Assembly: GCF_003704095.1 (NCBI RefSeq)
Contig: NW_020844827.1
Coordinates: 496,001 to 560,000, forward strand
Direction of reading: 5' to 3'
DNA length: 64,000 nucleotides
Source of the DNA: Pocillopora damicornis
Lineage: Eukaryota
The notes below the pieces were generated by a model. The model saw only the letters and a list, made by a program, of their open reading frames with translations. It searched no databases and had not been told where the DNA came from. Both the position numbers and the translations under genes were made by a program. Shown here in pieces: positions 4,351-48,783 of the stretch. The stretch's first letter is position 1; the number at the start of each line of letters is the position of its first letter.

Positions 4351-5061
4351 TCTAAAATAATGAAAAATGATGAAAAACTAGGAGAGGAATATTCTATTGC
4401 CGTTTACTCCGCGCGCAAGATTTCAAATGTAACTTTTACACAGTCTTGGGTTTGACCGTGTATGAACCATGAGGAATATTCTATTGTCGTTTACTATGTG
4501 GTTAAGATTTCAAATGTAACTTTGTAAACAGTCTTTACTTTAACTGTGTAATAACCATCGCCCTCGCGATGGCCAGAAAAACCATACGGCAAATGACACA
4601 AGATTTACCTTGTTACACGTGCCCTTGCTCGGGTTGGCTTGCTGACAAGCTGGGAGGGTATCAAAAGTTGGAAAAAGACTAAACAGTCCCCTTATAAAGC
4701 GATTATTAAATAAATATTTAGAGATTTCGCTTATAATTGCAGAGTCGGTCACAATAGTATTATTACTACAGAGGTAAATCATTACACGATATCAAACTAC
4801 AAATACACTTATCCTTGTTTTGAAAATGGTGGATGAATGACCTAATGTTATTCGCCTGTATTTATCTGTGAAAAGCTGATTTCTCTTGAGGCAGGCAGAA
4901 ACAGATAGGGACAGCCTCAAAGCCGAGAAGGAATAAGATGGGAGGTGTGAATGGGAAATCANNNNNNNNNNNNNNNNNNNNNNNNNNNNNNNNNNNNNNN
5001 NNNNNNNNNNNNNNNNNNNNNNNNNNNNNNNNNNNNNNNNNNNNNNNNNNNNNNNNNNNNN

Positions 5062-8000
5062 AGCGTATCGAACAGAGTAGTGAGCGTCTCTGGCGAAATA
5101 AACACCACGTCCATAAGCCGTGCCTGAAAAAAAATAGAATGTTCAATTTAGAGAAAAATATCAACAAAACCATACATTCGGTGAAGTTATTTCTTATAAA
5201 AGAGGCAATTGTATTCTTCTTCTATTATTACAGCTTTTATTACCAATTTTTGGCTCCAAAGAGTGATTTTGCCTGAGCTCATTCAACGTCTCAGTGACTT
5301 GTTAGGACAGGTAGACAAATATATTAATAGAATTGTGGCCAAAACACCATTAGTCTCACCAAAAAATTGCTTTAACTTGTTAAGAGCAATCGCTGTAAAA
5401 TGTTGCTTCAATGCTCCTTTTTAACACACGAAGCTTTCGAAATGAATGATCCTAGCGGGACGTGGAAGGCGTGCCAGATATTAACCACGTGAAAACCCTG
5501 CTCATCATAGAGTATGTAGCTCAATAGTAAAGCGTTGAAAAATGAAATCTGAAGATCTGAGGTTCGATTCCTCACAAGTACTTGAAATTTTTCCTTAATC
5601 CCACCCCGTAGCTAGACGAGAAAACTTCTCCTCTATTTAAAATTTCAGTGACTTACCATGAGCCCCACAGAAGCTCCTGTTGAATCCTTGTGTGTTGATA
5701 TGGTTGATATTTTTAGCATCAGTCCCATGAAACAGCTGTCTTTCACTATTTCCTCCAGAATCTTTATATATTTTCTGCTTTCGTACCATGTAAGACTGAT
5801 ACAGATGAGGATTCTGTACGCGTTCAATCTTCTGAATATTTAAGGCACCGGCTGTAGCTTGAAACTTACGTACCACATCTTGATACTCAGGAGAGCTTGG
5901 GTGCAGTGGTACTTTATGTACAGTGGAGTCATGGCTGGGCATTGGTGTCCAGTGCTTTGGCAGAGCAATTCCTACAGAAAGGACCAAAAGATTAGAATGT
6001 TGAAATGAAAACCCATCGACTGAAGTTAAATTTCAACATCCAAGAACATATTCAAGGTAAGACACATTCAAGATCATCAAGAAAGCTCAGTGGGGACATT
6101 TAAGGACAGCTTTTCTGAATATCCCCTTCCTGTATTACATGTTTATTACCTTAAACGTCCTCTGGGACATGAAGTAGCTCTTCGTCCTTTCTTAAAGCTT
6201 ATCGAAACATCCTCTTCAAAAGAAATGCATAGCAACTAACCTTCATCAGCACCCTTCACCTTTCTTGTCAGTGTTATTTGTTCAGCAGACATTTGTCCAC
6301 GTCCAGAGTTTTTGTTCAAGTCGATGACAAACTTGTCTCCTCGTAGAGAAACTTGCACTGTGTGCTCGTCTTTGCTATGGGCCAACTCAATCTTGGCATT
6401 TGCTTTCGGAGCGAACGCCATTTGTATGCCTTGTATTTCATAGCTCCACTCTATGTTCTTTGAAACCAACTTCGCTTGTTCTTCCTCCTGCTTCCTCTTC
6501 GTCCTCTCCTTGATCTCTTTCCAGATCTCCCCGACTATTCCAGGAACTTCGGTTGGTCCACCACGAACGACAATGCGATCAACGTCATCTTCAATTTCAA
6601 GTTTGACGTCACGGTCTTTAGCCTTTTTTCTCAGGATATCTTTCTGCTTATCGGAAAGCTGACTGACGATTTCATCTTCGACTTCTTCCGTTGTACAGGC
6701 GTCAGAGAAACCTTTCTTCAAGGACTCCACGGCTTTTCCCACGCTCACCTTGTCTTTGCCGATCACAGAAATTTTTACAGAATGTTTATTACTTTGGCCT
6801 GGTGCCTGCCTACGTCCACGTCTTCGGGTTTGCCTGGCTACTGCATCCTCTGAGTCACTGTCTTCTTCAATACCTCGCACCAGTTGTTTCTTCTGCTCTT
6901 GTAGAAACTCCTGCATCATAGAGGCCTGGAACACGACCACTCTTACTTTTTTAATATTTTTACAGCGGGCAATGAATGCGCTTAGTGCTTTGAACGTCAG
7001 TTGGGCTGAGTCCGCTGCGGTCAAGCCGTATCCTCCTGTGCCAACACACGGAATTGAGATCGCTTGAAAGTTATTGGCGTCCGCAACGCAAAGACCCTCC
7101 ACCAAACATTGCTGGAGATGTTGCTTATCTGAGGAGCCTGGAATTATGTGAATAATATGAGGTACTCGTAAATTACCTCCGCTGGTCATTTTCGCTGTTC
7201 CAGGAGGCTGCTTTCCCAATTTGTTGCATTCTAGTTGCACAAATGGACCACTCTGTCTTGCTATGGCTTTGCTTAGGTCTCCAGCATTATTCATGTTCAT
7301 GTCCGTGCTGTTGATATTCATGATAGCGTCAGTGCTGTTCTCTTGCGTCAAATCACCATTTATCACCTCGATACTGAACAGGCTAGTTAAGGTTATGCGC
7401 TGAGCCACACCTACTTGTGGAGAAAACGAGTGCCTCTGATGTTCTTGCTGAAATACCGACAGCATTGGAGACTCGAAGATTACGATCCTGACCTTGTGGA
7501 CACTACGGAAACTTCCACTAAAGTTTGTCAGGGCCTTAAATATCAGGCTGGCCGAGTCCACTGCAGAAACATGGAATGCACCAGTACCAACTGCGGGAAT
7601 CGAAATGGATCCAAGACTATGCGTCTCTGCCAGCCGAAGACATCTTTCAACACACTGCTGGAGGTGGTCTTTATTATTGGTGTCTGGAATTAAGTGAATA
7701 ATTTTCTGCGTAGGGAGATTTCCACTGCTGGTGATCAATGCGGCTCCACCTGATTGCTGTCCAAACTGCTTCAACTCAGTCTCAACCTGTGGCCCGGCTA
7801 GCTGTTTCACTGTCTGGCTCAACCTTCCAGCACTGTCCATATTCAGGTCTTTACTTGTTATATTCACTATGGCATCCGTAGTTTCCTGGCACAAGTCGCC
7901 CTGCAAGACTTCAATGCTTACACCCGATGTCTCCACCGTTTGCTTCCTTTTAAAGAGTGTTCTGCTCACAAAATTTTTGAAGACAGAGGGGCTACTTTGC

Positions 8001-10461
8001 TTGGGTTGCAGTTTTTCCATCTCTTGTTTGAAGGCAGCAATTAATGCTTGATCTTGGTTAAACACGACAAATCGTATGTCCCGTAAATTAGAACCAGGGT
8101 TGGTTTTGCAGAAATTGACTGTTTCATCCAGCATGATTCTCGAGGCTGCATCGCGTGGGAAGCGCAGGTTTCCAGTCCCAATGACAGGAAATGAAATGGA
8201 GTTGGCTCCAAGCATTTCGCCTATTTGCAGACACTTTTGAACGATGGCCCTTAGCGTCTACAAAAGATGAAATAGAAGTTGTTGAAAATCTTTTCGTTCC
8301 TATGTGATCTCAATAGCAATTCTCCACACTGTCTTCTGTACATTTCTTTTGAGTTTGGCACTTAAAATTTGGCGTTAAGTCATGCAATATCCCCTTATTG
8401 GTATATTTTACTTCTTCCCGTCACCTTTCCGGTTGATAATGGATTGATAATAGGAGGAGAAAAAAAAATGACTGGTCACTCCTTAAAAGAGTGACCTTAA
8501 AAAGGTAAAAAAACACTGACTCCCCTTCAAGCTATTTTTAGTTTTCTTGGAATTTGTTTTCCGGGGATCAAAGTTATCTGAAACTTAAATTTTGTTAACA
8601 TTTTTCAGAGGATATTGAGAGGGCGCCATGCAGGATGTTCACACCAGAGAACATCAGGATCAGGATCGAGGATGTTTGAATTATAACTTCACCGAAATTA
8701 CCTTTAGCCCTAATTAATTCTTTCTTGGTAGTGAAAATTTCACATCTCATTTTGTTTTTTTTCTAGGAAGATCTTTGCTCTCACTAACTCTACAAAATTT
8801 CTGATTAAGATTTTCGAATGATACCAGAAACTGAAAGTTACTTTATGCAATAATTGTGTCGTTACATATACGATTGATCATTCCCGAAGAGAATGGTCCT
8901 GTTACGAAAGAACAACGAACCGACGCTATTTATTCTATTCCTTGCAATGACTGTGATAACGAGTATCGAACAGACCAAACGTCAGTTTGGTACACGTTTG
9001 AAAGAGCATCAAAAAGCGGTTTTCTTTTATAAAAAAGAAAATTTAGCTTTATCGGAGCACACATGCCTAACCAACCCTACAATTCAGTGGGATGTCTAAA
9101 ATTATCACTACTAATCGGCGTTACCACCAGCGCCTTTGTTTGGAAGCCTGGCATATTAACTCCGTCCACGCTCCTCTAAATCGTGATGATGGCGGCTTAC
9201 TTCCTGACGCCCATTTACACCTCGTTAGAAAAAAGGCAGCTAATTGGTGAGCGTATAAAGGGACCTCTGGTTGCAGCGTTTAGATCACCCCTGATGAAGG
9301 CATTAGACAGGAATGTCGAAATATTGGGTCTATGAATTGTAACTTCTCGGTTACATTCATTAAATCTTTAAACCAGAGTAGCATCAAACCATGTCTGACA
9401 TGACGGAATGTTTGACGATAACCTACATCGGAAATAACATCAAATCGAGCCTGAACAGTCTTCAGTTGCTGTATGCTACAAGAGAATGTATAGGATTCGC
9501 CAGTCGGGCATCCGATATCGTTTAGGCTTTAATCAAATCTAAACAATAAGTACTCTTCAATGTATTTTCATTGTTTCTTACCGGCTCCCCTCCACCGTTG
9601 TTCCACTTACAACAGTTAGCGAGAATCACGTGACTGACCGAGGAAAAACCACCTGAGACAGTGATGTCACCAACGTTGGGGATTTTGGACCTGGGGCCAC
9701 CGGTGTTAATGATTGCTTTATGGCATGCTCCTAGAGAACTGACAAGTACGTCAGCCTGGAAGACACAACCAAAAAAATATTGTCAGTGCTTCATGAACTT
9801 CTTCAATATGGTTGACTGTAATCATTATCAGACTTGGCACTCCTTATTAGAGAGGCGTTACATAATGTAACCACACTCTATGAGCAGAAAAGAGCTAAGT
9901 GCAGAATTAAAATCCATATAAGAGGAATGGTAAGTTTTTGAGCTCGGTGAAGAAATGAAGAAACATTTTTTTCGTCTTGTCCCATGCTCGTGGCAAGACG
10001 AAAAACATCTCTCTTTATTTCTTTACGGAGCTCAAAAACTACCATCTCTCTTGTTTCCATCTGCAAACATTACGCTATCGACATTGCTGATCCTAGCAGT
10101 ATGCAGGACGCGTGTTATATGAACTTCGTAATAGACCTCTCTCACCGTGAAATCTCTGTGGCTCAGTGGTAGAGCATCGGAGCGCGGAATCCAAAGGTCT
10201 GAGGTTCGATTCCTCATGGGGACTCAGATTTTTTTTCTTTGTCACACGCTCGTGACAAGACGAAAAACATCTTCCTTTAAAATCCATATATGTGCCAACA
10301 AGATCCTCTAAGTTATTTTCGTAAAATATTCTGCTGGTGTGAAGAAATCAGTGAGTCCATCTTACCTTCTCTTCTCCTATGTTTCCAGGTTTCCACGACA
10401 CTCTGTACCTTTGGGCTATTACCAGGGTAGACGAGTCAGTTCCAGTAGTGGTAGCGTGGTC
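5062..10461 (-). CDS. PARP14-like: Gene A2 3' part: PARP14-like Macro x3-WWE-PARP (5' part in gap)
   Basis: Exons gap/10461-10366, 9755-9582, 8257-6241, 5971-5657, 5123-gap; LFHGT and GTAYGRGVYFARD. The last codons probably lie at 50329-50307 on a misplaced contig. Confidence 0.9.
8885..9430 (+). mobile_element. Penelope-like GIY-YIG 3' fragment in an intron of A2
   Basis: YSIPCNDC..QTKRQFGTRLKEHQKAV..LEAWHI; hammerhead-like motif at 9281-9330; partial copy at 60650-60945 (minus). Confidence 0.8.
9925..10278 (+). mobile_element. tRNA-derived SINE-like repeat
   Basis: A box tggctcagtggtagag and B box ggttcgattcc at ~10158-10213; degenerate relatives at ~5450-5630, 27055-27230, 34035-34100, 45965-46150. 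Confidence 0.7.
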
Positions 10462-23800: not shown

Positions 23801-26800
23801 TTTGCGTATTCATGGTTATAGTTCTTAACTTAGCTTTCATGAGCTCATAGAGTGTGGTTACATCATTTAACGTCTCCTGTATTGAGATAGCCACGTCTGA
23901 CTACGACAACAGTTCACCATATTGAAGAAGTTAATAAAATCATTAACATTATCTTTTGGTTGTGTATTTCAGGCTGACCTACTTGTCAGTTGTCTAGGAG
24001 CATGCGATAAAGCAATCATTAATGCCGGTGGTCCTCAGGCCGCAACCCCCAAAGTTGGTGACATCACTATCTCAGGCGGTTTTTCCTCGGTCAGTCACGT
24101 GATTCACAGTCACTGTTGTACGTGGAACAACGGTGGAGGGGAGCCGGTAAGAAACAGTGAATTGTACGTACATAATTAAGTATTAGTTCACTTTTGAGGG
24201 AGAGGACCTCTCTAAAATACATCACGAGTATTTATTGTTTAGATTTGCTGAAAGCCTAAGCGATGTCGGATGCCCAGCCTATCCATTCTCTTGTAGGTAA
24301 AATTAACTGAATACTATTCAGGCTCGTTTTGATGTTATTTCCGATGTAGTGTACCTTTAAACATTCTGTCATGTTTATTAAGAAAGCCTCACTCCTCACC
24401 GAATACATCGAAAATGATCAATCGAATATTAAACGACGGGACTATTGCACAAAGTGACTTTCAATTTCAAATATCATCCTACTAGAAAAAAACAAATTGC
24501 GCAGTGAAATTTTCACCAATAAAAAAAAATTAATTAGGTCCATTCCAAAGGTAATTTCCGTGAGGTTATAATCCTACCATCCTCGATCTTGATCCCAAAA
24601 GAAAGTACTACTTGTATGAGCATCTTACATGGCGCCCTCTTAATATCCTGAGGAAAATGTTGGTAAAACTCAAGGTTGAGATAACTTTGTTCCCCGGAAA
24701 ACAGATTCCAGGAAGTTTAAAAATAGCTTGAAAGGGATTCAGTTTTTCATCCTTTTCAGTTTAAGGAGTGACCAGTAAGTTTTTTCTCCTCTCATTATTA
24801 GTGCATTGTCAACCAGAAAGGTGACGGGAAGAAGGAAAAAATACCAATGAGATATTGCATGACTTGACGACAAATTTGACCTCCAAATTCATAAGAAATG
24901 TACAGAAGACGTAGAATTCCTATTGAGATCACATAGGAATGAAGGGATTTACTAGATCCCCTCTTGCCACCAGATTGTCCGTCCGTGCCACTAACATTCG
25001 ACAACTTCTGTTTTATCGTTTGTAGACGCTAAGGGCCATCGTTCAAAAGTGTCTGCAAGCGGGTGAAACACTTAGAGCCAAGTCCATTGCATTTCCTGTC
25101 ATTGGGACTGGAAATCTACACTTCCCTCGCGACACAGCCTCGAGAATCATGTTGGAAGAAACAGTCAATTTCTGCCGAGCCAACCCTGGTTCTAATTTAC
25201 AGGACATCCGATTTGTCGTGTTTGACCAAGATCAAGCATTAACTGCCGCCTTCAAACAAGAGATGGAAAAACTGCAACCCAAGCAAATTGGCAACTCACA
25301 TTTGACAGTCCAGGTGGTAAATGGTGATTTGACTCAAGAGAACAGCACTGATGCTATTGTGAATATTCTGAGCACGGATATAAAGATGGATAACGCCGGA
25401 GACCTGAGCAAAGCCATAGCAAGACAGAGTGGTCCACTAGTGCAACAAGAATGCAACCAATTGGGAAAGCAGACTCCTGGAACAGCGATAGTGACCAGTG
25501 GAGGTAATTTACAAGTACCTTATATTATTCACATCATTCCAGGCTCCTCAGATAAGCAGCATCTCCAGCAATGTTTGGAGGAGGGTCTTCGTGTTGCAGA
25601 CGCCAATAACTTTCAAGCGATCTCAATTCCGTGTGTTGGCACTGTAGGATACGGCTTGACCACAGCGGACTCAGCCCAGCTGACGTTCAAAGCACTAAAC
25701 GCATTCAGTGCCCGTTGTAAAAACATTCAGAAAGTAAGAGTAGTTGTGTTCCAGGCCTCTATGATGCAGGAGTATCTACAAGAGCAGAAAAAACCAGTGC
25801 AAGATATTGAAGAAGACAGTGACTCAGAGAATGCAGCAGCTGGGAAAACCAGAAGACGCGGACGTAGGCAGGCACCAGGCCAAAGTGACGAACATTCTGT
25901 AAGAATTTCTGTGATTGGCAAAGACAAGGTGAGCGTGGAAAGAGCCGTGGACTCCTTGAAGAAAGGTTTTTCGGACGCTTGTCCAATGGAAAAAGTCGAA
26001 AGTGACGTCATCAGTCAGCTTTCCGATAAGCAGAAGAATATGCTGAGAAAGAAAGCTAAAGACCGTGACGTCAAACTTGAAATTGAGGATGACGTGGATC
26101 GCATTATCATTCGTGGTGGACCAACCGAGGTTGCTGGAATAGTCGGGGAGATCTGGAGAGAGATCAACAAAAGGATGAAGAAGAAACAGGAGGAAGAACA
26201 AGCGAAGTTGGTTTCAAAGAACGTAGAGTGGAGCTATGAAATACAAGGCACAAAAGTAGCGTTTTCCCCGAAAGCAAATGCCAAGATTGAGTTGGCCCAC
26301 AGCAAAGATGAGCACACAGTGCAAGTTTCTCTACGCGGAGACAAGTTTGTCATCGACTTGAAGAGAAACTCTGGACTTGGACAAACGTCTGGTGAACAAA
26401 TATCACTGACAAGAAAGGTGAAGGGTGCTGATGAAGGTTAGTTGCTATGCATTTCTTTTGATGAAGATGTTTCGATAAGCCTTGAGAAGGGACTAAAAGC
26501 TATTTTATTTCCCAGAGAATGTTTAAGGGAATAAATATACAGTACACGTAGGGGGTTATCAGAAAAGTTGCCCTCAAATGCCTCTCCTGAGTTTTTTTGT
26601 TGATCTTTTATCTGTGTCTTACCTGAAAAATGTACTTGGATGTTGAAATTTAATCTCAGTCGATGGGTTTTCACTTCAATATTCTAATCTTGTGGTCCTT
26701 TCTGTAGGAATTGCTCTGCCAAAACACTGGACACCAATGCCCGGCCACGACTCTACTGTACATAGAGTACTACTGCTCCCAGGCTCCCCTGAGTATCAAG

Positions 26801-31143: not shown

Positions 31144-34100
31144 CTACTTTTTTGTTTTCTCAAAGGTAATTAAGTATTTCGGGTAAACATGATAGTCATT
31201 AAAAACCACGAAAATCTTCGGATCTTCCTCCCTATTCACCACCGAGTCGAACAGGATTTCTGGTGTACTGGGATCTTTGGGGGGAGGCTTTTTCAGTCTT
31301 TGCTCGCCAGCAGTGTACTTTCCGACCAATACTCTCGCTAAATACATGCAGCGTTCATCATTTGGGCCTGGTTGAGAATACGTCAAAGAATAAGAGGCAT
31401 CTTTCGCAAAGTAGACACCGTCGCCATACGCTGCACCTGTGTGGGGAACAAATTTGTTGTTTCCTCTTAGAAAGCAAAACGACTGCAGCTGAGTAGTTTT
31501 GAATGACAAACGCTAACACTACTTTACGTACAAGTCATATGGCCTAAAGGAAGCTGACGCGATAGACGGGTTAGGCAAGGCAGTATTGAGTTATTCATAT
31601 AAATGGGAGGTACATGTTAGATTAGGGAAGGAAAACAAAGATTCCAGAGACTGATTTATACTCCTTTTAAATGCGTACGTACTTCGACAAAACTGGCCAG
31701 AAGTCCAAGGAATACAATTAAAAATCAGGTACAATAGGATCCATGCATTACATTCTCCCCTCAAAGACTGATTAATGCTAATTACAAACATTTCAATTAT
31801 TCGTAGACTTCTACACATACCATGAACGCCACACAGACTTCTATTAAATCCCTGAACGTTGATCTCCTTCACGCTTTCTGGCCTTGTTCCGTGAAAGAGT
31901 TCCAGCTCGTTGTCGATAGTTCCATTCTTTTCATCCATGCTTTGTTTCCGCAACATGTACGAATTAAACATAGACGGATTTTGAATTCTCTCGATCTTTG
32001 AAATGACTACTTTTCCACTCAGTGTCCGCAGGAATTTCTCCTCAACCGCTTTGTATTCTTGAGAGTCCTCTGGGAGGCTGACCATGTAAAGGATCTCCTC
32101 TTTTCCTCGGTTGTCTCGAGGTTGGGGGTCCCATTCATCGGGAAGAGGAAGCACTGTTAATGCAACAAAAAAACCCTTAATGATACCAGTGAAGCTTTAT
32201 GTATGACAATTTGATGAAACTACAGAATTGGGTTAAGGTTAAGGTTAAGGTTAAACTCCTAAATCAGCCAAGTTTATATGCAGTAGAAGTACATGGGTGA
32301 ACCCCCTGAATCTAACTCTTTTTCAGTCTTTTCAAACACGCCTTCTCGTGACAAACTTAACCTGCTCTAAAATACGAGACATTACATATGGACGCGTATC
32401 ACAGCCCTTACCATCTTTACGAAGTGCCGTTTTGATGGCGCCAGTTCTCAGGAACGTAACCTCTTTGTTCTCGAAGTTGATTTCAGCCTTCAGATCCCGA
32501 TGAGTGAATAAAAGTGACGGTTTCTTCTCTTTATACGCTGACTCTATTTCATTATTGGCCATTTTGTCGAAAGCGGCAAATATTCCTCCTGGATTTACTA
32601 AATACCATTGCACAGTTTTAGACATCTGTTCTGCACGCTCCTCTTTGTGTTCTCTTTCCATCTGCTCTTGGATTACATCCGAAACTTCCGAGTTGACGTC
32701 CATTACATCTTTTGGAAGTCCTTCCAATGTTAACACGTTCGGTTCGGGTTGCTCCAATTTTACATCTCGAGCACGAGACATCCGTTTCAGCTCCTGCATG
32801 CACCTTTTGGGGAAACGACTTATAATTTCGTGCCTGATGACGCGAGGGTTGCCGCAGGCTTTTTCTACACCGTCTTTCAAGGCTGTCATAATTGCCTCAA
32901 ATGACTCTGACCGAGCATGAATGACGATCTTCTGGGGCCGTCTTCTTGTTAATGCATCGATGGACGCTTCTGAGCCCATTTCGTAGTAGCCTTGATCATC
33001 GTCTTCGTCGTCAGAGTGGGTTGAGTCAACATATTCTCGCTGTATTGCTTCCAACTCTGCCACGAATGCTGCAGTGACAGAATCGTCAAAAACTACGACT
33101 CTAATCTCCCGAATTGAACGGTCTAGTTTAGCCATAAATGCGCGGATTGCCCCGAAGACCAACTCTGCTGATTCATCCGCAGTTTGACCCAATCCTCCAC
33201 TGCCAACCGCTGGAATGGACACTGATTTCAAGCCCATAGAATCCACTTCTTCCAGTGCTTTCTCCACGCAAGTCTGAAGATTCTTCTTGGTGACAGGTCC
33301 CACAACCATATGTACGATGTGCTTTGCAAACAAGCGCCCAGCAGATGTAATCACAACGGATCCAGCTGGGTGCTGAGGAGCTTTTGACTTTAACTCACTT
33401 TCTACAGTGCTACCACATGCCTGTATGATGGCTCTACTCAGATTTCCAGATTTCATGTTCAGATCTTTAGTAACAATATTACATATGGCATCGGAACGTT
33501 CCTTGGTGATGTCTCCTTTCAAGACCTTTAACATCATATCTTCAAGGCAGACTTCTTTAGAATAAAATTCAGCTAGAACAGGCGTTGGCTTGTTTTTGCG
33601 AACTTCCGGTTTTCGAGTTTTCACCCTGGGCCTCTGTTCTCCTTTGAACTCTCTAAATCTCTCCGTGATTGTTTCAATTCCTTTCTCATCACCGCCAAAC
33701 ACAACAAACTTAAACTCCTCCAGGGGTGAATCTGGATTTGAGCGGCTGTAGTCAACTGCTGCCTGGATCATAATCTGGACAGCAGTGTCACAAGGGAAAC
33801 CAAGGTTACCGGTTCCAACAAGCGGTAGGCTTATAGAACATGCACCAAGCTCTGATGCTTTGTCAAAGCACTTCCGAAACAGCTCTTGAAGAAGCTGTGA
33901 AAGAAATACCAAAAAGCATTAAAAAACAACTTTTCAAAAAAACTGAGTGGCTATGTTGTTGATCCTAACAGTATGCAGAAAGCCTTGTACAGGCCCTCGA
34001 CGACAGACTGGTTCCCACAAAAACAGACTGATTCTCTGTGGCTCAGCGGGAGAGCATCGGAGCATGAAAGCCGTGGCTCGAATCCTCAAGGGGACGGAGT

Positions 34101-40100: not shown

Positions 40101-41663
40101 GCAGAAGCTCTTGTTCCTTCTTCCTGCGAAGATGCTGCAATCTCAGAGGCTCCTGCTAGAGTAGTAGGGGAAGGGCTCCTAGCAACAGAGGCTCTTGTTC
40201 CTTCTTCCTGCGAAGTTGCGACTATCTCAGCGGCTCCTGCTTGAGTGATAGGGGAAGGGCTCCAGGTAACGGAGGCTCCTGCTCCTTCTCCCTCTGAAGT
40301 TGCTGCTATCTCTGAGGCTCCTGCCTGAGTGGTAGAAGAAGGGCTCCTAGTAACAGTGGCTCTTGTTCCTTCTTCCTGCGAAGTTGCTGCTCTCTCAGAG
40401 GTTCTCACTTGTGGGTCAGGTATGCTGCAGTCAATTCTCAAAGCAAGTCGAGCTGAGGATAAATATTGAATAACTTTTCTATAAGATCCCAAGTTAAAGT
40501 ACGCCTAACTTTCGTCATGCAGAATAATATGCCCTAGCATCTCAACTGTTTGCTGTTTACCTGGACCAACTGCAATTTACTCGCCAATCAGCAATTAAAC
40601 CAAATGGTTAGACAACAGGGCTATAGCCTAAGATAAACACAACAACAACCTAATAGCTTCGTGATGCAATGAATGAGTCACTATAACTTCCGATGGGAAG
40701 TTAAATGGCCATTAAAACACTCTCAAAGAGCTGTATTTCGATCGCCCATCTAGCCTTAGACTCTTTCTAAAAATAGGAAAACTGTCGGGAAAAACTTTTC
40801 AAAATATAAGAACTCCTTCTGTGTTTTCCGGTCGGTCCGGGATCGTTTCTTGAACATGGAGCGCAAATTGATTTATTTCTCCTGCAATAATGGAAGAAAT
40901 TCAACTAACCTCCTTGTTCTCGTGAACTTTCAGTTAAGACGCTTAGTTTACGATCCATCCTCTGTTGCAGCTTTCCTAGTTGATCCATCTGGTCTTTCAT
41001 TTCCTGAGTTGTAGTTTCTAGTTTCTCTATTGATTTCTTAACCTCCATATCGTTTTTATACCAAGTCAGCAATTCCTCCACATTCCTTCTATCCTCTTCC
41101 GTGAGGGGATCTGTAAAAAATTTATTGATCGCCTTCTGCCATTCCGTTTTCTTTTCAGGGCTGATGTGTCCCGCAATCCTGACAAGAGCCTCACTTATCT
41201 CATTCCATAAGGATGAAAACTCTGCATCTGACATCTCCATGTTCTGCGAAGCATGACCATAGATAGAGTTCCGGTAGTATTTAATTCTCGCTAAATCTGC
41301 TTCCAAACTGTGATCTTCACTTGCTGGAAGTTCATCCCAGCCTGTCGCAGGTGGGATAAGCGTGAAAAGTGTTCTGAGTAGTCTGAAGAGTAGAGTAACA
41401 TCAAAGTCTTGTGACTTGCCATAAACCCCTGGGGAAGGGTACAGGCAGTCCCACAGTGGTTTGGAGAGCTTTGCTGCTTTAAGCTTATTTTTTGTCGTAG
41501 AATCTTGCAGCAACTTTGGAAGATCATTTGGAGAACAAAACATGTCAAAAATTTCCCTCAGCAGTGTAGTACCTCCAGTTATCAGCAGACGAGTCAAGCG
41601 TTGGAAATTTTCTTTGTCGGCATTCGAACGAAGCAAATCATCAGGGTCGCGGGCGGTGGCCAT
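31144..41663 (-). CDS. PARP14-like: Gene D: HEPN(DZIP3-like)-TRADD-N-like-RRM-RRM-KH-Macro-Macro-WWE-PARP fusion protein, ~2135 aa, 11 coding exons
   Basis: Exons 41663-40910, 40452-39733, 39439-39269, 38875-38642, 37843-37598, 37419-37180, 36589-34890, 34618-34385, 33894-32412, 32153-31821, 31436-31144. All GT-AG with compatible phases; total 6408 nt, open to the stop. Motifs: RNSIYGH (HEPN), GDITKERSDAICN and PAVGSGGLG (macro), VQWYL..EIESAY (WWE), LFHGT / GVYFA / KIFVVF..YPKYLITF (ART). The PARP portion (37843-31144) is high confidence; the join to the upstream exons is predicted from splice phases. Confidence 0.8.
39733..40452 (-). CDS. Exon of gene D: Ser/Thr/Ala-rich repeats plus TRADD-N-like domain
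   Basis: ORF 39716-40492; FVQYLKEVRQVLIVDTKRGSLIIIVECTSLEILDGLWNDYCSGQL resembles the TRADD-like N-terminal domain of invertebrate NLR-type proteins; phase 1-1 exon of 720 nt. Confidence 0.75.
40072..40400 (-). repeat. Coding 84-bp (28-aa) tandem repeat x4
   Basis: SEIAATSQEEGTRASV.RSPSPTTQAGA-like units; 84-nt period (e.g. 40232 vs 40316). Confidence 0.9.
40910..41663 (-). CDS. First coding exon of gene D: DZIP3/hRUL138-like HEPN domain plus coiled coil
   Basis: NFQRLTRLLI..G..LLRE.FD, FDVTLLFRLLR, PATGWD.LP, DLARIKYYRNSIYGH; aaaATGG start context; acceptor before 41702; phase-1 donor GGAG|GTTAGT. Confidence 0.9.
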
Positions 41664-44659
41664 TTTATTTATCCACAGGCAGCTGACTAAAATTACATGT
41701 CCCTGAAAGTAACAAACGGATCAGAAAACGGTTTTAATTGTGGTTCAAAGTACACCAAGGTCGCGCTCAGTCTTTCATACAAGACTTGTCAAAGTCAATT
41801 AACCTCTTGTGCTAGATACAGAAAATACCGATGACAGTTATGTGCATCAAGAAACTTGATACAAACATATTGGGAAATAAGCCCCATATTTCCTTTGGCA
41901 TACATATGGTATTTGACTACACGAAACAAATTTGTAGAGGCGAGCGACTGAAACGTAGACTTAACTTACGTAGAGATGATTGAAGATGCAAGAGACCTCG
42001 TGAAAGTATGAAAGTATGAAAACTGAATGAATGAATCAATGAACGAATGAATGAATGAAATAATAATTGATTGAATGAACAAACCAACGAATGAATAAAT
42101 GAATGGATAGATGAAAGAAATAAATTGACACCACTTGCTTGGAACTAAACTTAAATCTCTGAACTGAACCGGCGACAGATAAAAAATTTACTCATTGATG
42201 TGAATTTGCCGTGAACTCTGCACGCCATTGAGCTCACTTTGACATGAATAAAAAGCAGTCTAGTTTAAGACCTCCAATGTCATGTGTTCTACTTGTTTAC
42301 GCTGTGTATTTTTCTCTATTGATTTTTTCGAATCATTTTTTCAAAAAAACAACGTTTGTGTCTACGTCATGGATCGTTGTTAATGTCTTGCGTGAAGCGT
42401 GACAGGATTTGCGCCCGAAGCTATGTGAATCGTCCAATGAGGAGGCCAGGGTTGCTCTCGGCTCCGAAAAAAATTTGCATATTTCACGTGGTCTAATGCA
42501 ACATGTTTCGAACAACAGTAGTGCGGATAGAATGCATCCTTTAAATCAGTCACTGATTTTTGCTCCTTTTTTATTGAATCTTCTCTTAAACGCCGCCTCC
42601 GTAAATGTGTTCAGAAATGTAGTTCAATTAAAATTCGCCGCAATCTCACGGAACACCAGAACTGTCTTACAGTACTTTTTTCTCGTGATTATATATAGTA
42701 TTTATTTCATTTTACTCTGTCCCTCTATCTTTATATTCAATGCTATTTTCATGATAAGGGTGCAAAGCTCATTACATCCGGTTCAAACCATTACATTCGG
42801 TTCTGACACCATTATATTCTGCACTTTTTCCACTTTTCCACTCTATACTATATTGCACCCAGTATTTGTTCTAATAGAAGACTTTGCTTTGTGAATTTCA
42901 AATGACAAATAAGGTGACAAACCGGTTGGCGATGACATGAAAACCATACAAAGGCGTAAATACTACATCACGAAACTCTACAATCAAAGTAAAGTGTACG
43001 ATTGTCAACGAACGAATTACAGCTGCGCTAGCTAGTTTACCCCAAGACTAGTGGATATCATATCCTCGCCAAGATCAGCCTTTTGCAATTTCATTCCGTA
43101 GGCTAGAACTAGCATAATATAATTTCATAATTTACTTTTGAAAACATGTTTAGGGGGTATTACAAACATTTCTCACACAGAAATTTCCAATTGATAAGAA
43201 CCGGTTGAGATATTTTATTCAAATGGATCATTTTATTTTCAATCTAGAGGTCCTTATAGCCTGATCATGAAAAATAAACTTCCTTGAAGTACTATTTAGC
43301 TCAGGGTCAGTTATAAACTTCAGATCTATTTCAAAACAAGATGCAACAAACTCGACTAACAAGGAGGATGTTTTTAAAATAGTACAAAGCCTCGAACTCC
43401 GATATATATCGAAAAAGTTCCCCTAAATAAGACCAAAATCAGATTTTATAAATAACTGAATTTTCGAAGGAAAAATAAAATTTGTGCTGTCTGATTTAGA
43501 AACGATAATTATTAGGAAACTATTGGAAAATTTACCTGAAATAACACTGTGTATCTATTGAATTATCGAGACTAACAACGGCGACTTTGATATGCTTACC
43601 TCGATGTGGTGCCAATTTTTCCTACATGTTACGGCTTTTAAATTCAAAACAACCAAAAATGCGGAATATCGTTTAGTCTAGAACACCAATCGATCCAAAA
43701 GAAGCAATTTTCAAGTGTTCACCGTGTGTCAAAAGCATGGCTTCGTCCGTCTCGAGACTTCCGCCTTTCTTCTTAGAATCAGGGATCAAAGCGAGGCTTC
43801 CTTTCACTATGTCACGTAATGTCTTAAAGCATACTGAGCGTGACAGGAATCGTTATCTAAGTCACAACTATCTTAGTGTGAGGCATATGGTAAATAGATT
43901 GCCCAGAATTTAAGTTTTTGTAAGGAGCATAAAATTAAAACCGTCCTCAACTGAAGGTGGCCGTAGCTGTGATCTAAATTTCATTAGGGATTCTTCGTCA
44001 GCCTGCTCTAATAATCGGCGGGAAGACCCCCTTTCACTCGTTCGATGTAAAAAGCGCTATTTGTGGTCAAAAAGGGAAAACAAATGCCTCAGTTTTTCGC
44101 TATTCCTTTATTTTAATACCAGTTGCAGTTACACAATGCTTTTGACTACCCTCTTAGCGCGAACCAGTTTTTTAATATCTCAAATAGATTCCCTACCTGG
44201 TGAATCTTCTACACCATAAAAGTAAGTGAAAGTCTTCATTAAAGAATGAGACAACGTGCGCGTTACTAAAAATTAACAGCCAGTCACATAGTTACTAGAA
44301 TACCAAACAAACGAGATGGGGAAAAAGGAGTACATTAAAAAATAACCCTAAAGACTTTTATATATATACAAAACCTCGTTTAAAACGTTAAATTTTAATT
44401 CTTGGAAGTATGAAGTCATGGCCCCTATGAGAGCCATTTTAGAAAATGTTTCATCTGTGTATCAGAAATTATAACCTAACCTGAGTAAGGGGTCAATTTT
44501 ATCGAGTCTGCCTTGAAAGGCAGAATGTTCCTCACATTTCTTCTATATGTTCAATGTTGTCGAACTGAAACGAGGACATTTCTTTTTTAACTCAGTATTA
44601 AAGTAAAGATCTTGGTTTTTAAGTGCCAATGACACGAATTTTTTTTTTTGGCGTCTTGC

Positions 44660-45255: not shown

Positions 45256-48200
45256 TCAAAAGGTTATAAGGTATTCAGGGTAACACTGATTATCAAAGAA
45301 AACAACAAAGATGCTGGGGTTTGATTGGTTATCAACCACGGAATCGTAAAGAATTTCAGGTTTCGATGGATTTTTTGGTGGAGGCACAATCATTGAAGGA
45401 TCTCCAACACAATACTGCCCCACGAGGACCTTGGCAAAGTACATTTGGCGCCCTCCACCACCCCCAGCGCATGCAACAGAGTATTGAGCGTCTCTAGCGA
45501 AATAAACACCACGTCCATAGGCCGTGCCTGAAAAAAAAGCTCAATTTAGAAAAAAAGGATCGACAAAATCATACATGCGGTGAAGTTATTTGTTATGAAA
45601 GAGGCAGTTGTACTCTCCTTATATTATTACAGCTTTTATTACCATATTTGACTCTAAAGAGTGACTTGGTGGGACAGGTAGACAAATAAAAGTTTAGCCA
45701 AAAAAACGCTTTAACCTTTTAAACTCTACAATAACAAGCCTAAATCACACATTAAGGTCATGAGAATAAAGGAAATGGTCACCTGTGAAGGAACCTTTTG
45801 ATTAGCAAACAAATTCTTTGTTTCAGCACCTTAGGAAATGTTTCAAGAACGGAGTGGAGAATGTGCATACTGATGTTAGGGTATAAAGGGTTAACTACTT
45901 AGGACCAATCGCTCGAAAATGCTGCTTCAATGCTCCTTTTTCTCACACGAAGCTTTCGAAATTAATGATCCTAGCAGTATGTGGAAGGCGTGCCACATAT
46001 TAACCACTTGAAAACTCTGCTCATCATAGAGTCTGTAGCTCGATGGTAGAGCGTTGGAGCGAGGAAATCTGAAAGCCTGACGTTCGATTTCTCATAAGTA
46101 CTTGAAATTTTTCCTTAATCCCACTCGGTGACGAGATGATGAAACGTTTCCTCTATTTAAAATTTCAGTGACTTACCACGACTCCCACAGAAGTTTCTGT
46201 CGAATCCATGTGTGTTGATATGGTTGATATTTTTAGCATCCGTCCCATGAAACAGCTGTCTTTCACTATTTCCTCCCGCATCTTTATCCATTTTCTGTTT
46301 TCGTACCATGTAAGACTGATATAGATGAGGATTCTGTACGCGTTCAATCCTCTGAATATTTAACGCTCCGGCTGTGGCTTGAAACTTACGTACCACATCT
46401 TGATACTCAGGGGAGCTTGGGTGCAATGGTACTTTATGTACAGTGGAGTCATGGCTGGGCATTGGTGTCCAGTGCTTTGGCAGAGCAATTCCTACAGAAA
46501 GGACCAAAACATTAGAATGTTGAAATGAAAACCCATCTACTGAGGTTAAATTTCAAGATCCAAGTATATTTTTCAGGTAAGACACATACAAGATCAACAG
46601 GAAAGCTTGGGAGAGACATTTTAGGACAGCTTTTCTGAATATGCCGTATCTGTATCACAAATTTATTACCTTAAACGTTCTCTGAGACATGAAATAGCTC
46701 TCAGTCTTTTCTTAAACTTTATCGAAACATCCTCTTCAAAAGAGATGTCTAGCAACTTACCTTCATCAGCACCCTTCACCTTTCTTTTCAGTGTTATTTG
46801 TTCACCAGACGTTTGTCCACGTCCAGAGTTTCTCTTCAAGTCGATGACAAACTTGTCTCCTCGTAGAGAAACTTGCACTGTGTGCTCGTCTTTGCTGTGG
46901 GCCAACTCAATCCTGGCATTTGCTTTCGGAGCGAACGCCATTTGTATGCCTTGTATTTCATAGCTCCACTCTATGTTCTTTGAAACCAACTTCGCTTGTT
47001 CTTCCTCCTGCTTCTTCTTCGTCCTCTCATTGATCTCTTTCCAGATCTCCCCGACTATTCCAGAAACTTCGGTTGGTCCACCACGAACGACAATGCGATC
47101 AACGTCATCCTCAATTTCAAGTTTGACGTCACGGTCTTTAGCTTTTTTTCTCAAGATATCCTTCTGCTTATCGAAAAGCTGACTGACGACGTCAGTTTCG
47201 ACTTTTTCCATTGTACAAGCGTCAGAGAAACCTTTCTTCAAGGATTCCACGGCTTTTCCCACGCTCGCCTTGTCTTTGCCAATCACAAAAATTCTTACAG
47301 AATGTTCATCACTTTGGCCTGGTGCCTGCCTACGTCCGCGTCTTCGGGTTTGCCTGGCTACTGCATTCTCTGAGTCACTGTCTTCTTCAATACCTTGCAC
47401 CAGTTGTTTCTTCTGCTCTTGTAGAAACTCCTGCATCATGGAGGCCTGGAACACAAGCACTCTTACTTTTTGAATATTTTTACAGCGGGCACTGAATGCA
47501 TTTAGTGCTTTGAATGTCAGCTGTGCTGAGTCCGCTCCGGTCAAGCCGTATCCTCCTGCGCCAACACACGGAATTGAGATAGCTTGAAAGTTATTGGCGT
47601 CCGCAACGCGAAGACCCTCCTCCAAACATTGCTGGAGATGTTGCTTATCTGAGGAGCCTGGAATTATGTGAATAATATGAGGTACTTGTAAATTACCTCC
47701 GCTTGTCATTATCGCTGTTCCAGGAGGCTGCTTTCCCAATTGGTTGCATTCTTGTTGCACAAGTGGACCACTCTGTCTTGCTATGGCTTTGCTTAGGTCT
47801 CCGGCATTATTCATGTTCATGTCCGTGCTGTTGATATTCATGATAGCGTCAGTGCTGTTCTCTTGCGTCAAATCACCATTTATCACCTCGATACTGAACG
47901 GGCTAGTTAAGGTTATGCGCTGAGCCACACCTACTTGTGGAGAAAACGAGTGCCTCTGATGTTCTTGCTGAAATGCCGACAACATTGGAGACTCGAAGAT
48001 TACGATCCTGACCTTGCGGACACTACGGAAGCTTCCACTAAAGTTTGTCAGGGCCTTAAATATCAGACTGGCCGAGTCCACTGCAGAAACATGGAATGCA
48101 CCGGTACCAACTGCGGGAATCGAAATGGATCCAAGACTATGCGTCTCTGCCAGCCGGAGACATCTTTCAACACACTGCTGGAGGTGGTCTTTATTATTGG

Positions 48201-48783
48201 TGTCTGGAATTAAGTGAATAATTTTCTGCGTAGGGAGATTTCCACTGCTGGTGATCAATGCGGTTCCACCTGATTGCTGTCCGAACTGCTTCAACTCAGT
48301 CTCAACCTGTGGCCCGGCTAGCTGTTTCACTGTCTCGCTCAACTTTCCAGCACTGTCCATATTCAAGTCCTTACTTGTTATATTCACTATGGCATCCGTA
48401 GTTTCCCGGCACAAGTCGCCCTGCAAGACTTCAATGCTTACACCCAATGTCCCCACTGTTTTCTTCCATCCAAAGAAGGAACGTATTCCTCTAGTAAAAG
48501 TCGTGAAGGCAGGGAGGCTAGTTTGCTTGGGCTGTAGTTTGTCCATCTCTTGTTTGAAGGCAGCAGTTAATGCTTGATCTTGGTTAAACACGACAAATCG
48601 GATGTCCCGTAAATTAGAACCAGGGTTGGTTTTGCAGAAATTGACTGTTTCATCCAACATGATTCTCGAGGCTGCATCGCGTGGGAAGTGTAGGTTTCCA
48701 GTCCCAATGACAGGAAATGCAATGGAGTTCGCTCCAAGCGTTTCGCCTGTTTGCAGACACTTTTGAACGATTGCCCTTAGCGT
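45256..48783 (-). CDS. PARP14-like: Gene C 3' half: macro-1 C-terminus, Macro, Macro, KH-like, WWE, PARP catalytic domain
   Basis: Exons 48783-46761, 46491-46177, 45527-45256 (stop); LFHGT, GVYFA, PSIFVVFFDNQCYPEYLITF (H-Y-I mono-ART type). Confidence 0.92.
45711..45894. mobile_element. TTAA MITE in the last intron of gene C
   Basis: ttaacctttt...aaagggttaa; the empty site at ~5372 has one TTAA; related copies at 51680-51773 and 62574-62731. Confidence 0.7.

What the first reader, a model, noticed from the sequence alone, without database searches (positions are those of the whole stretch)
31144..41663. HEPN RNase + TRADD-N-like head fused in frame to a full PARP14-like macro-PARP (gene D, ~2135 aa)
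Seen: the HEPN ORF (40905-41663) and TRADD-N-like ORF (39716-40492) look like separate genes, but each has a phase-1 GT donor just before its stop. They chain through a 171-nt exon missing from the ORF track (39439-39269) and an RG-rich exon into RRM1. All 11 exons give one open 6408-nt frame. The HEPN motif R-N-S-I-Y-G-H and the ART triad H-Y-I are both intact. Established: HEPN Rx4-6H domains are dimer-activated RNases (RNase L, Ire1, Cas13, bacterial Abi/toxins), and vertebrate PARP9/14/15 are interferon-linked antiviral macro-PARPs without HEPN. From recall, DZIP3-type HEPN heads occur on cnidarian NACHT/NLR-like proteins. Inference: an NLR-type effector head has been grafted onto an RNA-binding ADP-ribose reader/writer. 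This could be a single-chain sensor-nuclease, analogous to the ZAP(PARP13)-KHNYN pair. I know of no description of this architecture but cannot search.
Basis: partly seen in the sequence, partly recalled or inferred. Interest (0 to 1): 0.93.

Follow-up and report, generated by a model that had tools for sequence, protein, structure and literature searches.

The report
Coral HEPN–TRADD-N–PARP14 fusion gene, already catalogued
A reef-coral gene really does splice a predicted RNA-cutting HEPN domain and a TRADD-N adaptor onto a PARP14-like ADP-ribosyltransferase, but this protein and its domain layout were already listed in a 2021 comparative-genomics paper, so it is confirmed and not new.

Summary
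On the minus strand, 11 coding exons (41663 to 31144) give one open 6408-nt frame of 2135 aa. All introns are GT-AG. Single contigs run from the HEPN exon into the KH/macro body. Domain calls hold: HEPN_DZIP3 (E 9e-40, RNSIYGH motif kept), TRADD-like_N, KH_PARP14, two Macro domains, a weak WWE match, and a PARP catalytic domain with an H-Y-I triad.

The claim that the architecture is undescribed fails. [quoted passage not shown] Their source data list Pocillopora damicornis RMX48053.1 (pdam_00002642, 2135 aa) with this layout, plus three Stylophora pistillata models. The assembly size (234 Mb) and the identical protein length make this almost certainly that gene.

The sensor-nuclease mechanism remains an untested inference. 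The protein has two macro domains, which match PARP14 macro2 and macro3 chains, not three. The HEPN/coiled-coil/TRADD-N head is a portable module that also sits on TPR and ubiquitin-repeat tails. Novelty: already known. Interest is modest.

The parts
43600..43780 (-). Non-coding 5' leader exon. The 3' end is at 43600, followed by donor GT at 43599-98. The 5' end is approximate, at least 175 nt upstream.
   Evidence: All four RNA runs have a loose end at 41704. Its letters map uniquely to 43602-43620. An in-frame TAG lies 26 codons before the junction and there is no in-frame ATG.
40910..41702 (-). Coding exon 1, with acceptor AG at 41704-03 and ATG at 41663. It encodes the HEPN_DZIP3 domain (aa 46-190, motif R131-N-S-I-Y-G-H137) and a C-terminal coiled-coil stretch. 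It ends in phase 1 at G|GTTAGT.
39733..40452 (-). Coding exon 2, phase 1-1. It holds 3.6 copies of an 84-nt (28-aa) Ser/Thr/Glu/Ala-rich tandem repeat at 40102-40401, then the TRADD-like_N domain (exon aa 146-207).
39269..39439 (-). Coding exon 3, 171 nt, phase 1-1. It is a charged linker with no domain match.
   Evidence: Joints 39733/39439 and 39269/38875 appear in all four runs. The frame is open. No Pfam match.
38642..38875 (-). Coding exon 4, phase 1-1. It is an Arg/Gly-rich (RGG-like) stretch.
37598..37843 (-). Coding exon 5, phase 1-1. It is RRM-like by eye (LYVLGL ... GKAIVTL), but no Pfam match reaches significance.
   Evidence: Kaur et al. call two RRMs in RMX48053.1.
37180..37419 (-). 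Coding exon 6, phase 1-1. It holds the second RRM (RRM_1 at 17.8 bits, below the 20.7 cut-off).
34890..36589 (-). Coding exon 7, 1700 nt. It holds the PARP14-type KH repeat region (KH_PARP14_2 and _5 below cut-off), an acidic stretch and the start of the first macro domain.
   Evidence: Its 5' junction is. Its 3' donor CAG|GTTTGT is read.
34385..34618 (-). Coding exon 8, phase 0-0. It is the middle of the first macro domain (Macro E=1.1e-9). The best solved match is PARP14 chain 3vfq, residues 248-318.
32412..33894 (-). Coding exon 9. It holds the end of the first macro, the second macro (best match PARP14 chains 4abk and 7d2c), KH_PARP14_8 (30.9 bits, over cut-off) and WWE (19.7 bits, just below cut-off).
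31821..32153 (-). Coding exon 10. It is the N-terminal half of the PARP catalytic domain and carries the triad His (ELFHGT).
31144..31436 (-). Coding exon 11. It is the C-terminal half of the PARP catalytic domain, with the triad Tyr (GDGVYFA) and Ile (PKIFVVF). The stop codon is at 31146-31144.

Best explanation
This is one expressed gene of a pocilloporid reef coral. It is almost certainly Pocillopora damicornis pdam_00002642 (GenBank RMX48053.1, 2135 aa). It has one non-coding leader exon and 11 coding exons. The encoded protein reads, from N to C: HEPN_DZIP3 domain, coiled coil, 28-aa repeats, TRADD-N (DEDD2 clade), a linker, an RGG stretch, two RRM-like domains, about seven KH domains, two macro domains (PARP14 macro2-like and macro3-like), a KH domain, a WWE-like region and a mono-ADP-ribosyltransferase domain with an H-Y-I triad. 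It belongs to the lineage-specific expansion of TRADD-N immune or apoptosis proteins described in cnidarians. In that family, a constant head (here HEPN/coiled-coil/TRADD-N) is joined to variable effector or sensor tails (here a PARP14-like body). The run of symmetric phase-1 exons probably made the joining possible. Shown here: the exon structure, the splicing, the expression, the domain content and the intact catalytic motifs. Inferred only (about 40% odds): the RRM/KH/RGG body binds foreign or stress RNA, the macro and WWE modules read ADP-ribose made by the C-terminal mono-ART, TRADD-N and the coiled coil drive assembly, and assembly brings two HEPN domains together to form the composite Rx4-6H RNase site that cuts RNA.
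For: Splicing and expression: six junctions in contigs of four RNA studies, with single contigs linking the HEPN exon to the KH exon. Fifteen RNA runs across eight studies hold the exons. Frame: 6408 nt open across 11 GT-AG exons. The start codon is fixed by an in-frame stop in the leader. Domains. HEPN R/H motif conserved. H-Y-I triad. Macro identities. Identity and prior description: the text of Kaur et al. 2021 and its source data listing RMX48053.1, 2135 aa, P. damicornis, with this layout, plus S. pistillata PFX17023.1, PFX17028.1 and XP_022804139.1. The assembly is 234,350,878 bp, against 234 Mb for the published P. damicornis assembly. Modularity of the head: the same genome has HEPN/coiled-coil/TRADD-N with a TPR tail, and Oculina has it with ubiquitin-like repeats. 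Dimer-dependent HEPN catalysis is established knowledge (RNase L, Ire1, Cas13, Anantharaman et al. 2013), not tested here.
Against: Contigs are assemblies of short reads, so they cannot prove that single molecules run from exon 1 to exon 11. Junctions 7-10 were not seen directly. One run (X5) has a contig that retains intron 1. That form would end the frame at the TAG at 40907-40905 and give a 252-aa HEPN-only product. No RNase, ADP-ribosyltransferase or RNA-binding activity has been measured for any member. RNase activity of DZIP3-type HEPN domains is, to my knowledge, unproven. RRM and WWE calls are below Pfam cut-offs. I could not fetch RMX48053.1 itself, so identity with the window rests on species, assembly size, architecture and exact length. 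The HEPN homodimer prediction gave no answer.
Confidence: 0.85

Rival explanations
1. The fusion protein is real, but the HEPN domain is not a nuclease here. It would serve as an RNA-binding or dimerisation module. The protein would then act as a PARP14-like mono-ADP-ribosyltransferase recruited into death-fold or TRADD-N signalling complexes.
For: Human DZIP3, which names the Pfam family, is known (from my own knowledge) as an RNA-binding RING E3 ligase without demonstrated RNase activity. Some close relatives have lost the R/H motif, for example P0022 in alignment A1, which shows the fold is kept without catalysis. The homodimer prediction gave no support (not evidence either way).
Against: R131 and H137 are kept in this gene, in its paralogue gene C and in at least 90% of 18 relatives. 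That pattern suggests selection on the catalytic motif.
Confidence: 0.3
2. The locus mainly makes separate products. These would be a short HEPN or HEPN/TRADD-N protein and a PARP14-like protein from an internal start. The full-length fusion would be a minor read-through or an assembly chimera.
For: An intron-1-retaining contig in X5 would give a 252-aa HEPN-only protein. Contig depth for exon 1 differs from the body in X5 (21.9 against 63.4), though the tool warns that depth cannot rank parts of a gene. RefSeq has a 694-aa S. pistillata model with HEPN+TRADD-N+RRM+RRM.
Against: All six junctions are present in all four studies. Contigs cross from exon 1 into exon 2 and onward. Exons 2-6 contain no in-frame ATG before the TRADD-N domain, and all are phase 1-1, so they cannot start an independent frame cleanly. 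Two independent annotations (P. damicornis GenBank, S. pistillata RefSeq and GenBank) predict proteins of 2.0-2.1 kaa.
Confidence: 0.07
3. The head works as an autoinhibitory or decoy module. HEPN/TRADD-N would be cleaved off or displaced on activation, and the two halves would then act independently.
For: Kaur et al. propose that TRADD-N acts as a conformational switch and that proteolysis can release effectors in related architectures. Long, low-complexity linkers separate the head from the body: the 28-aa repeats, the 171-nt exon and the RGG stretch.
Against: No protease site or FIIND/ZU5 module was found in this protein. The idea is purely speculative.
Confidence: 0.08

Closest known systems
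Pocillopora damicornis RMX48053.1 (pdam_00002642) and Stylophora pistillata XP_022804139.1, PFX17023.1 and PFX17028.1, as catalogued by Kaur et al., eLife 2021
   Same: The layout is HEPN, coiled coil, TRADD-N (DEDD2 clade), RRM, RRM, KH repeats, Macro, Macro, PARP. RMX48053.1 has exactly the 2135 aa of the model built here and comes from a 234-Mb assembly like this one.
   Different: Probably nothing for RMX48053.1, which looks like the same gene. The Stylophora proteins are orthologues or paralogues of 1990-2107 aa. I could not align the sequences because accessions cannot be fetched with these tools.
Vertebrate PARP14 (ARTD8)
   Same: It shares RRMs, type I KH repeats, macro domains, WWE and a mono-ART catalytic domain. 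The best solved matches for every body exon are PARP14 or PARP15 chains. PARP14-specific KH Pfam families match.
   Different: PARP14 has no HEPN or TRADD-N head and no RGG stretch. It has three macro domains, including the macro1 hydrolase. The coral protein has two, which match macro2 and macro3 chains. The triad is H-Y-L in PARP14 and H-Y-I here, as in PARP10.
DED/TRADD-N(NCOA6 clade)/RRM/KH/Macro/PARP proteins of Crassostrea virginica and Amphimedon queenslandica (Kaur et al. 2021)
   Same: A TRADD-N adaptor is fused in front of a PARP14-like body. This is a parallel solution in other marine invertebrates.
   Different: Those heads carry Death or DED domains and a different TRADD-N clade. 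They have no HEPN.
HEPN_DZIP3 heads on other tails: NACHT/LRR or WD40 proteins, HEPN/TRADD-N/TPR (same genome, contig C2969), HEPN/TRADD-N/ubiquitin repeats (Oculina patagonica KAL9959088.1), and human DZIP3
   Same: They share the same Pfam family, with E-values of 1e-39 to 1e-52, placed at the N terminus. There are at least 90 HEPN_DZIP3 matches in this genome.
   Different: The tails differ. Only one locus in this genome combines HEPN, TRADD-N and PARP.
ZAP (PARP13) with KHNYN, and RNase L or Ire1
   Same: These are functional analogies only. An RNA-binding PARP-family protein is coupled to an endonuclease. In RNase L and Ire1, a HEPN (KEN) RNase is switched on by dimerisation (established knowledge).
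   Different: ZAP and KHNYN are two proteins, KHNYN uses a NYN (not HEPN) nuclease, and ZAP's PARP domain is inactive. No activity data exist for the coral protein.

Membership tests
HEPN_DZIP3 (PF18738) HEPN domain | Profile match over the curated cut-off | tested here: met
   136.2 bits against a cut-off of 27, E=9.1e-40, covering profile positions 2-139 of 144.
HEPN_DZIP3 (PF18738) HEPN domain | Rx4-6H catalytic motif | tested here: met
   R131-N-S-I-Y-G-H137 is present. Both residues are conserved in at least 90% of 18 aligned relatives.
HEPN_DZIP3 (PF18738) HEPN domain | Homodimer that forms a composite active site | tested here: inconclusive
   Complex prediction on residues 1-200 in two copies scored 0.00 with the verdict 'no answer'.
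HEPN_DZIP3 (PF18738) HEPN domain | Metal-independent RNase activity | not testable with these tools
   This needs a biochemical assay.
TRADD-N domain (PF20694), DEDD2 clade of Kaur et al. | Profile match over the curated cut-off | tested here: met
   30.9 bits against a cut-off of 23.7, E=2.4e-7, covering profile positions 2-68 of 69.
TRADD-N domain (PF20694), DEDD2 clade of Kaur et al. | Placement in the DEDD2 clade | not tested
   This is taken from the published table entry for RMX48053.1. No tree was built here.
PARP14-like macro-PARP | PARP catalytic domain with an H-Y-hydrophobic triad (mono-ART) | tested here: met
   PF00644 scores 33.6 and 59.6 bits on the two exons. His, Tyr and Ile align to the triad positions of PARP14 and PARP15 chains.
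PARP14-like macro-PARP | Three tandem macro domains | tested here: not met
   Only two macro domains are found. Their best solved matches are 3vfq residues 248-406, 5o2d and 3q71, and 4abk and 7d2c. I recall these as PARP14 macro2 and macro3. There is no macro1 equivalent.
PARP14-like macro-PARP | PARP14-type KH repeats | tested here: met
   KH_PARP14_8 scores 30.9 bits against a cut-off of 27. KH_PARP14_2 and KH_PARP14_5 fall below cut-off.
PARP14-like macro-PARP | N-terminal RRMs and a WWE domain before the catalytic domain | tested here: inconclusive
   RRM_1 scores 17.8 bits (cut-off 20.7) on exon 6, and nothing significant matches exon 5. WWE scores 19.7 bits (cut-off 21.1).

The most novel reading that the evidence does not exclude
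The protein could be a self-contained antiviral sensor-effector. RNA binding by the RGG/RRM/KH body and ADP-ribose writing and reading by the ART, macro and WWE modules would gate TRADD-N and coiled-coil driven oligomerisation. Oligomerisation would switch on the HEPN RNase. If so, it would be the first animal example of an ADP-ribosylation-controlled HEPN nuclease in one chain. The architecture is published, but this mechanism has never been tested.
Probability: 0.2. Interest if true: 0.7.

Novelty: already known. Interest (0 to 1): 0.3.

Why it matters
The gene couples three activities in one chain. They are a predicted RNase, a death-pathway adaptor and an RNA-binding ADP-ribose writer/reader. 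That makes it a good bench model for how invertebrate immune proteins are assembled by exon shuffling, and for whether PARP14-type proteins can direct a nuclease. The architecture itself, including this very protein, has been in the literature since 2021. That context is a tandem macro-PARP cluster with a second, degraded HEPN-headed paralogue.

Tried and rejected
1. Complex prediction on the HEPN domain (residues 1-200, two copies) scored 0.00 with the verdict 'no answer'. I do not use it for or against dimerisation.

2. The search of protein representatives with the HEPN exon returned no full-length HEPN-PARP protein among the top 150 representatives at 50% identity. The long hits were HEPN-NACHT, HEPN-TRADD-N and HEPN-polyubiquitin. 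The library is clustered and carries no names, so this says nothing about absence.

3. All searches were done exon by exon, by reference. As a result search for homologous proteins, which only sees proteins near the query length, could not reach full-length relatives, and I did not use it.

4. The X6 loose end at 40907 at first looked like alternative splicing of this HEPN exon. Its letters match only the paralogue gene C at 58839-58868, with 3 mismatches. I read it as gene C's transcript, not an isoform of this gene.

5. The X1 loose end at 38624 has no match in the window and remains unexplained.

6. The search of earlier findings by words returned nothing.

7. I considered an upstream extension of the ORF into the leader exon. 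I rejected it because of an in-frame TAG and the lack of an in-frame ATG.
Full report
**What is in the sequence**

The region 31144-41663 carries a string of minus-strand ORFs.

- Pfam assigns 40905-41663 to HEPN_DZIP3 (E=9.1e-40).
- It assigns 39716-40492 to TRADD-like_N (30.9 bits, cut-off 23.7).
- The ORFs further down match PARP14-type KH domains, Macro, WWE (weak) and the PARP catalytic domain.

I read the DNA. Both head ORFs end a few bases after a GT donor in phase 1. Good acceptors follow at 40452, 39439, 38875 and 37843, each with a pyrimidine tract and AG.

I checked the frame exon by exon without joining the exons. Eleven coding exons, all GT-AG, have no internal stop. They sum to 6408 nt, which is 2135 codons plus a stop.

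**Transcript evidence**

The stretch is held by 15 runs on record as RNA, out of 21 rows in 8 studies. These are coral and marine metatranscriptomes.

I laid contigs of four RNA runs from four studies on 36400-42300. All four show the same six joints:

- 40910/40452
- 39733/39439
- 39269/38875
- 38642/37843
- 37598/37419
- 37180/36589

All have GT..AG ends on the minus strand. Single contigs (X6, 4986 nt; X5, 5030 nt; X10, 2028 nt) chain the KH exon through both RRM exons, the RG exon, the 171-nt exon and the TRADD-N exon. X6, X10 and a separate X1 contig cross into the HEPN exon, with 90, 30 and 208/762 nt on the sides of the joint.

X5 contig 7 extends exactly 3227 nt beyond position 36400. 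That equals the rest of exon 7 (1510 nt) plus exon 8 (234 nt) plus exon 9 (1483 nt) in my model. This is indirect support for introns 7 and 8. Introns 9 and 10 rest on splice signals and on continuity of the alignment to PARP14 and PARP15.

All four runs also show a spliced leader. The letters beyond 41704 map to 43602-43620, just before a GT donor. The leader holds an in-frame TAG and no in-frame ATG, so the ATG at 41663 is the start codon.

There are caveats. Contigs are not single molecules. One X5 contig retains intron 1, and that form would end at the TAG at 40907-40905. One X1 contig covers intron 6.

**Catalytic motifs and domain details**

The HEPN motif is R131-N-S-I-Y-G-H137. Both R and H are conserved in at least 90% of 18 relatives, including the paralogue in this window.

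The catalytic exons align best to solved PARP15 and PARP14 chains. His (ELFHGT), Tyr (GDGVYFA) and Ile (PKIFVVF) sit at the triad positions. This is a mono-ART signature, by established knowledge of the H-Y-L and H-Y-I PARPs.

Only two macro domains exist.

- The first is split over exons 7-9. It matches PARP14 chains 3vfq (residues 248-406), 5o2d and 3q71.
- The second matches 4abk and 7d2c.

From memory of those entries, these are PARP14 macro2 and macro3. On that reading the macro1 hydrolase has no counterpart here.

RRM1 has no significant profile match. RRM2 and WWE are below cut-off.

Exon 2 holds 3.6 copies of an 84-nt repeat that codes a 28-aa Ser/Thr/Glu/Ala-rich linker. Exon 4 is an RGG-like stretch.

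**Prior description**

A full-text search found Kaur, Iyer, Burroughs and Aravind, eLife 2021. [quoted passage not shown]

Its Figure 4 source data list the following entries:

| Accession | Species | Length | Layout as listed |
|---|---|---|---|
| XP_022804139.1 | Stylophora pistillata | 2107 aa | Same layout as RMX48053.1 |
| PFX17023.1 | Stylophora pistillata | 2052 aa | HEPN+TRADDN-DEDD2+RRM+KHx3+Macro+Macro+PARP |
| PFX17028.1 | Stylophora pistillata | 1990 aa | HEPN+TRADDN-DEDD2+RRM+KHx3+Macro+Macro+PARP |

The window's assembly has 234,350,878 bases. The published P. damicornis assembly is 234 Mb. With the coral origin of the RNA runs and the identical length of 2135 aa, the gene in the window is almost certainly RMX48053.1. 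I could not fetch that accession to align it.

In the part of the table that is held, the HEPN/TRADD-N/PARP layout appears only in these two pocilloporid genera. The stored file is cut, so this is a lower bound.

**Context**

The genome has at least 90 HEPN_DZIP3 matches, 11 TRADD-N matches and at least 50 PARP matches. About ten PARP genes are clustered on the window's contig between 436 and 580 kb.

Only this locus combines HEPN, TRADD-N and PARP. A second HEPN/coiled-coil/TRADD-N head, on contig C2969, carries a TPR tail. The closest HEPN relatives (66% identity, Oculina patagonica) carry TRADD-N and ubiquitin-like repeats. More distant relatives carry NACHT with LRR or WD40.

So the portable unit is the HEPN/coiled-coil/TRADD-N head. 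The unbroken series of phase-1 introns around exons 2-6 is what exon shuffling would need. That last point is inference.

A paralogue, gene C, lies on the plus strand.

- Its HEPN exon (57647-58441) is 75% identical in protein to this gene's.
- It keeps a homologous leader exon.
- It keeps only the last 26 nt or so of the TRADD-N exon, with its donor, at 58712-58738.
- An RNA contig joins a HEPN exon end to letters that match 58839-58868.

**Mechanism**

Shown here: one spliced, expressed frame with an intact HEPN motif, an intact mono-ART triad, and macro domains of the macro2/macro3 (reader) type.

Inferred: the RGG/RRM/KH body binds RNA. The ART writes ADP-ribose, and the macro and WWE modules read it. 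TRADD-N and the coiled coil mediate assembly. Assembly pairs HEPN domains into an active RNase, as in RNase L or Ire1.

This follows the general proposal of Kaur et al. that TRADD-N is a switch which unleashes fused effectors, and that KH, RRM and HEPN point to RNA viruses as triggers and targets. No step of this mechanism was tested. The dimer prediction gave no answer.

The main rival is that the HEPN domain is non-catalytic and the protein acts as a PARP14-like mono-ART within TRADD-N signalling.

**Verdict**

- The novelty claim is refuted by a published description of this very protein.
- All searches used exon references.

Noticed in passing
window 57647-59919 (+ strand), gene C: This is a paralogous HEPN_DZIP3 exon (75% protein identity to this gene's, R..H motif kept). 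It is followed by only the last 26 nt or so of a TRADD-N exon plus its GT donor at 58712-58738, a possible small exon from 58837, and a KH_PARP14-like ORF at 59089-59919. An RNA contig (X6) joins a HEPN exon end to letters that match 58839-58868, so this copy seems to be expressed as HEPN directly on a PARP14-like body.
   Followed up: partly
window 43600-43780 (-) and about 55960-56010 (+): The non-coding leader exons of this gene and of gene C are homologous (89% over 55 nt, 86% over 36 nt) and point away from each other. This suggests an inverted duplication that included the promoter.
   Followed up: partly
window 40102-40401: An 84-nt tandem repeat (3.6 copies, 82% matches) inside coding exon 2 encodes 28-aa Ser/Thr/Glu/Ala-rich repeats between the coiled coil and TRADD-N. 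Its copy number may vary between individuals.
   Followed up: no
G000 contig C1462, about 436-580 kb (window = 496001-560000): About ten PARP catalytic-domain loci lie on both strands in roughly 145 kb, forming a tandem macro-PARP cluster. Large ORFs with Macro and WWE domains in the window lie at 6236-8215, 25149-26441 and 46666-48660.
   Followed up: partly
L003 (G000:C2969:31500-41499), minus strand: This is a second HEPN_DZIP3 plus apolipoprotein-like coiled coil (8027-9403) and TRADD-N (6694-7293) head in the same genome. It is followed by a TPR (NPHP3-like) ORF (5059-6123). A rhodopsin-type GPCR ORF lies further downstream.
   Followed up: partly
window 40425-40939 and 36622-37207: Two unspliced contigs were seen. 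X5 retains intron 1, with a 7-nt insertion and 8 differences (another haplotype). X1 covers intron 6. These may be pre-mRNA, DNA carry-over or real intron-retaining isoforms. Retention of intron 1 would give a 252-aa HEPN-only protein.
   Followed up: no
window 38624: An X1 contig ends its match at 38624, 17 nt into intron 4. It continues for 255 nt with letters found nowhere in the window. This is unexplained.
   Followed up: partly
window 42024-42125: A (TGAA)n / 12-nt microsatellite lies in the first intron, between the leader exon and coding exon 1. The read tool skipped it as a repeat.
   Followed up: no
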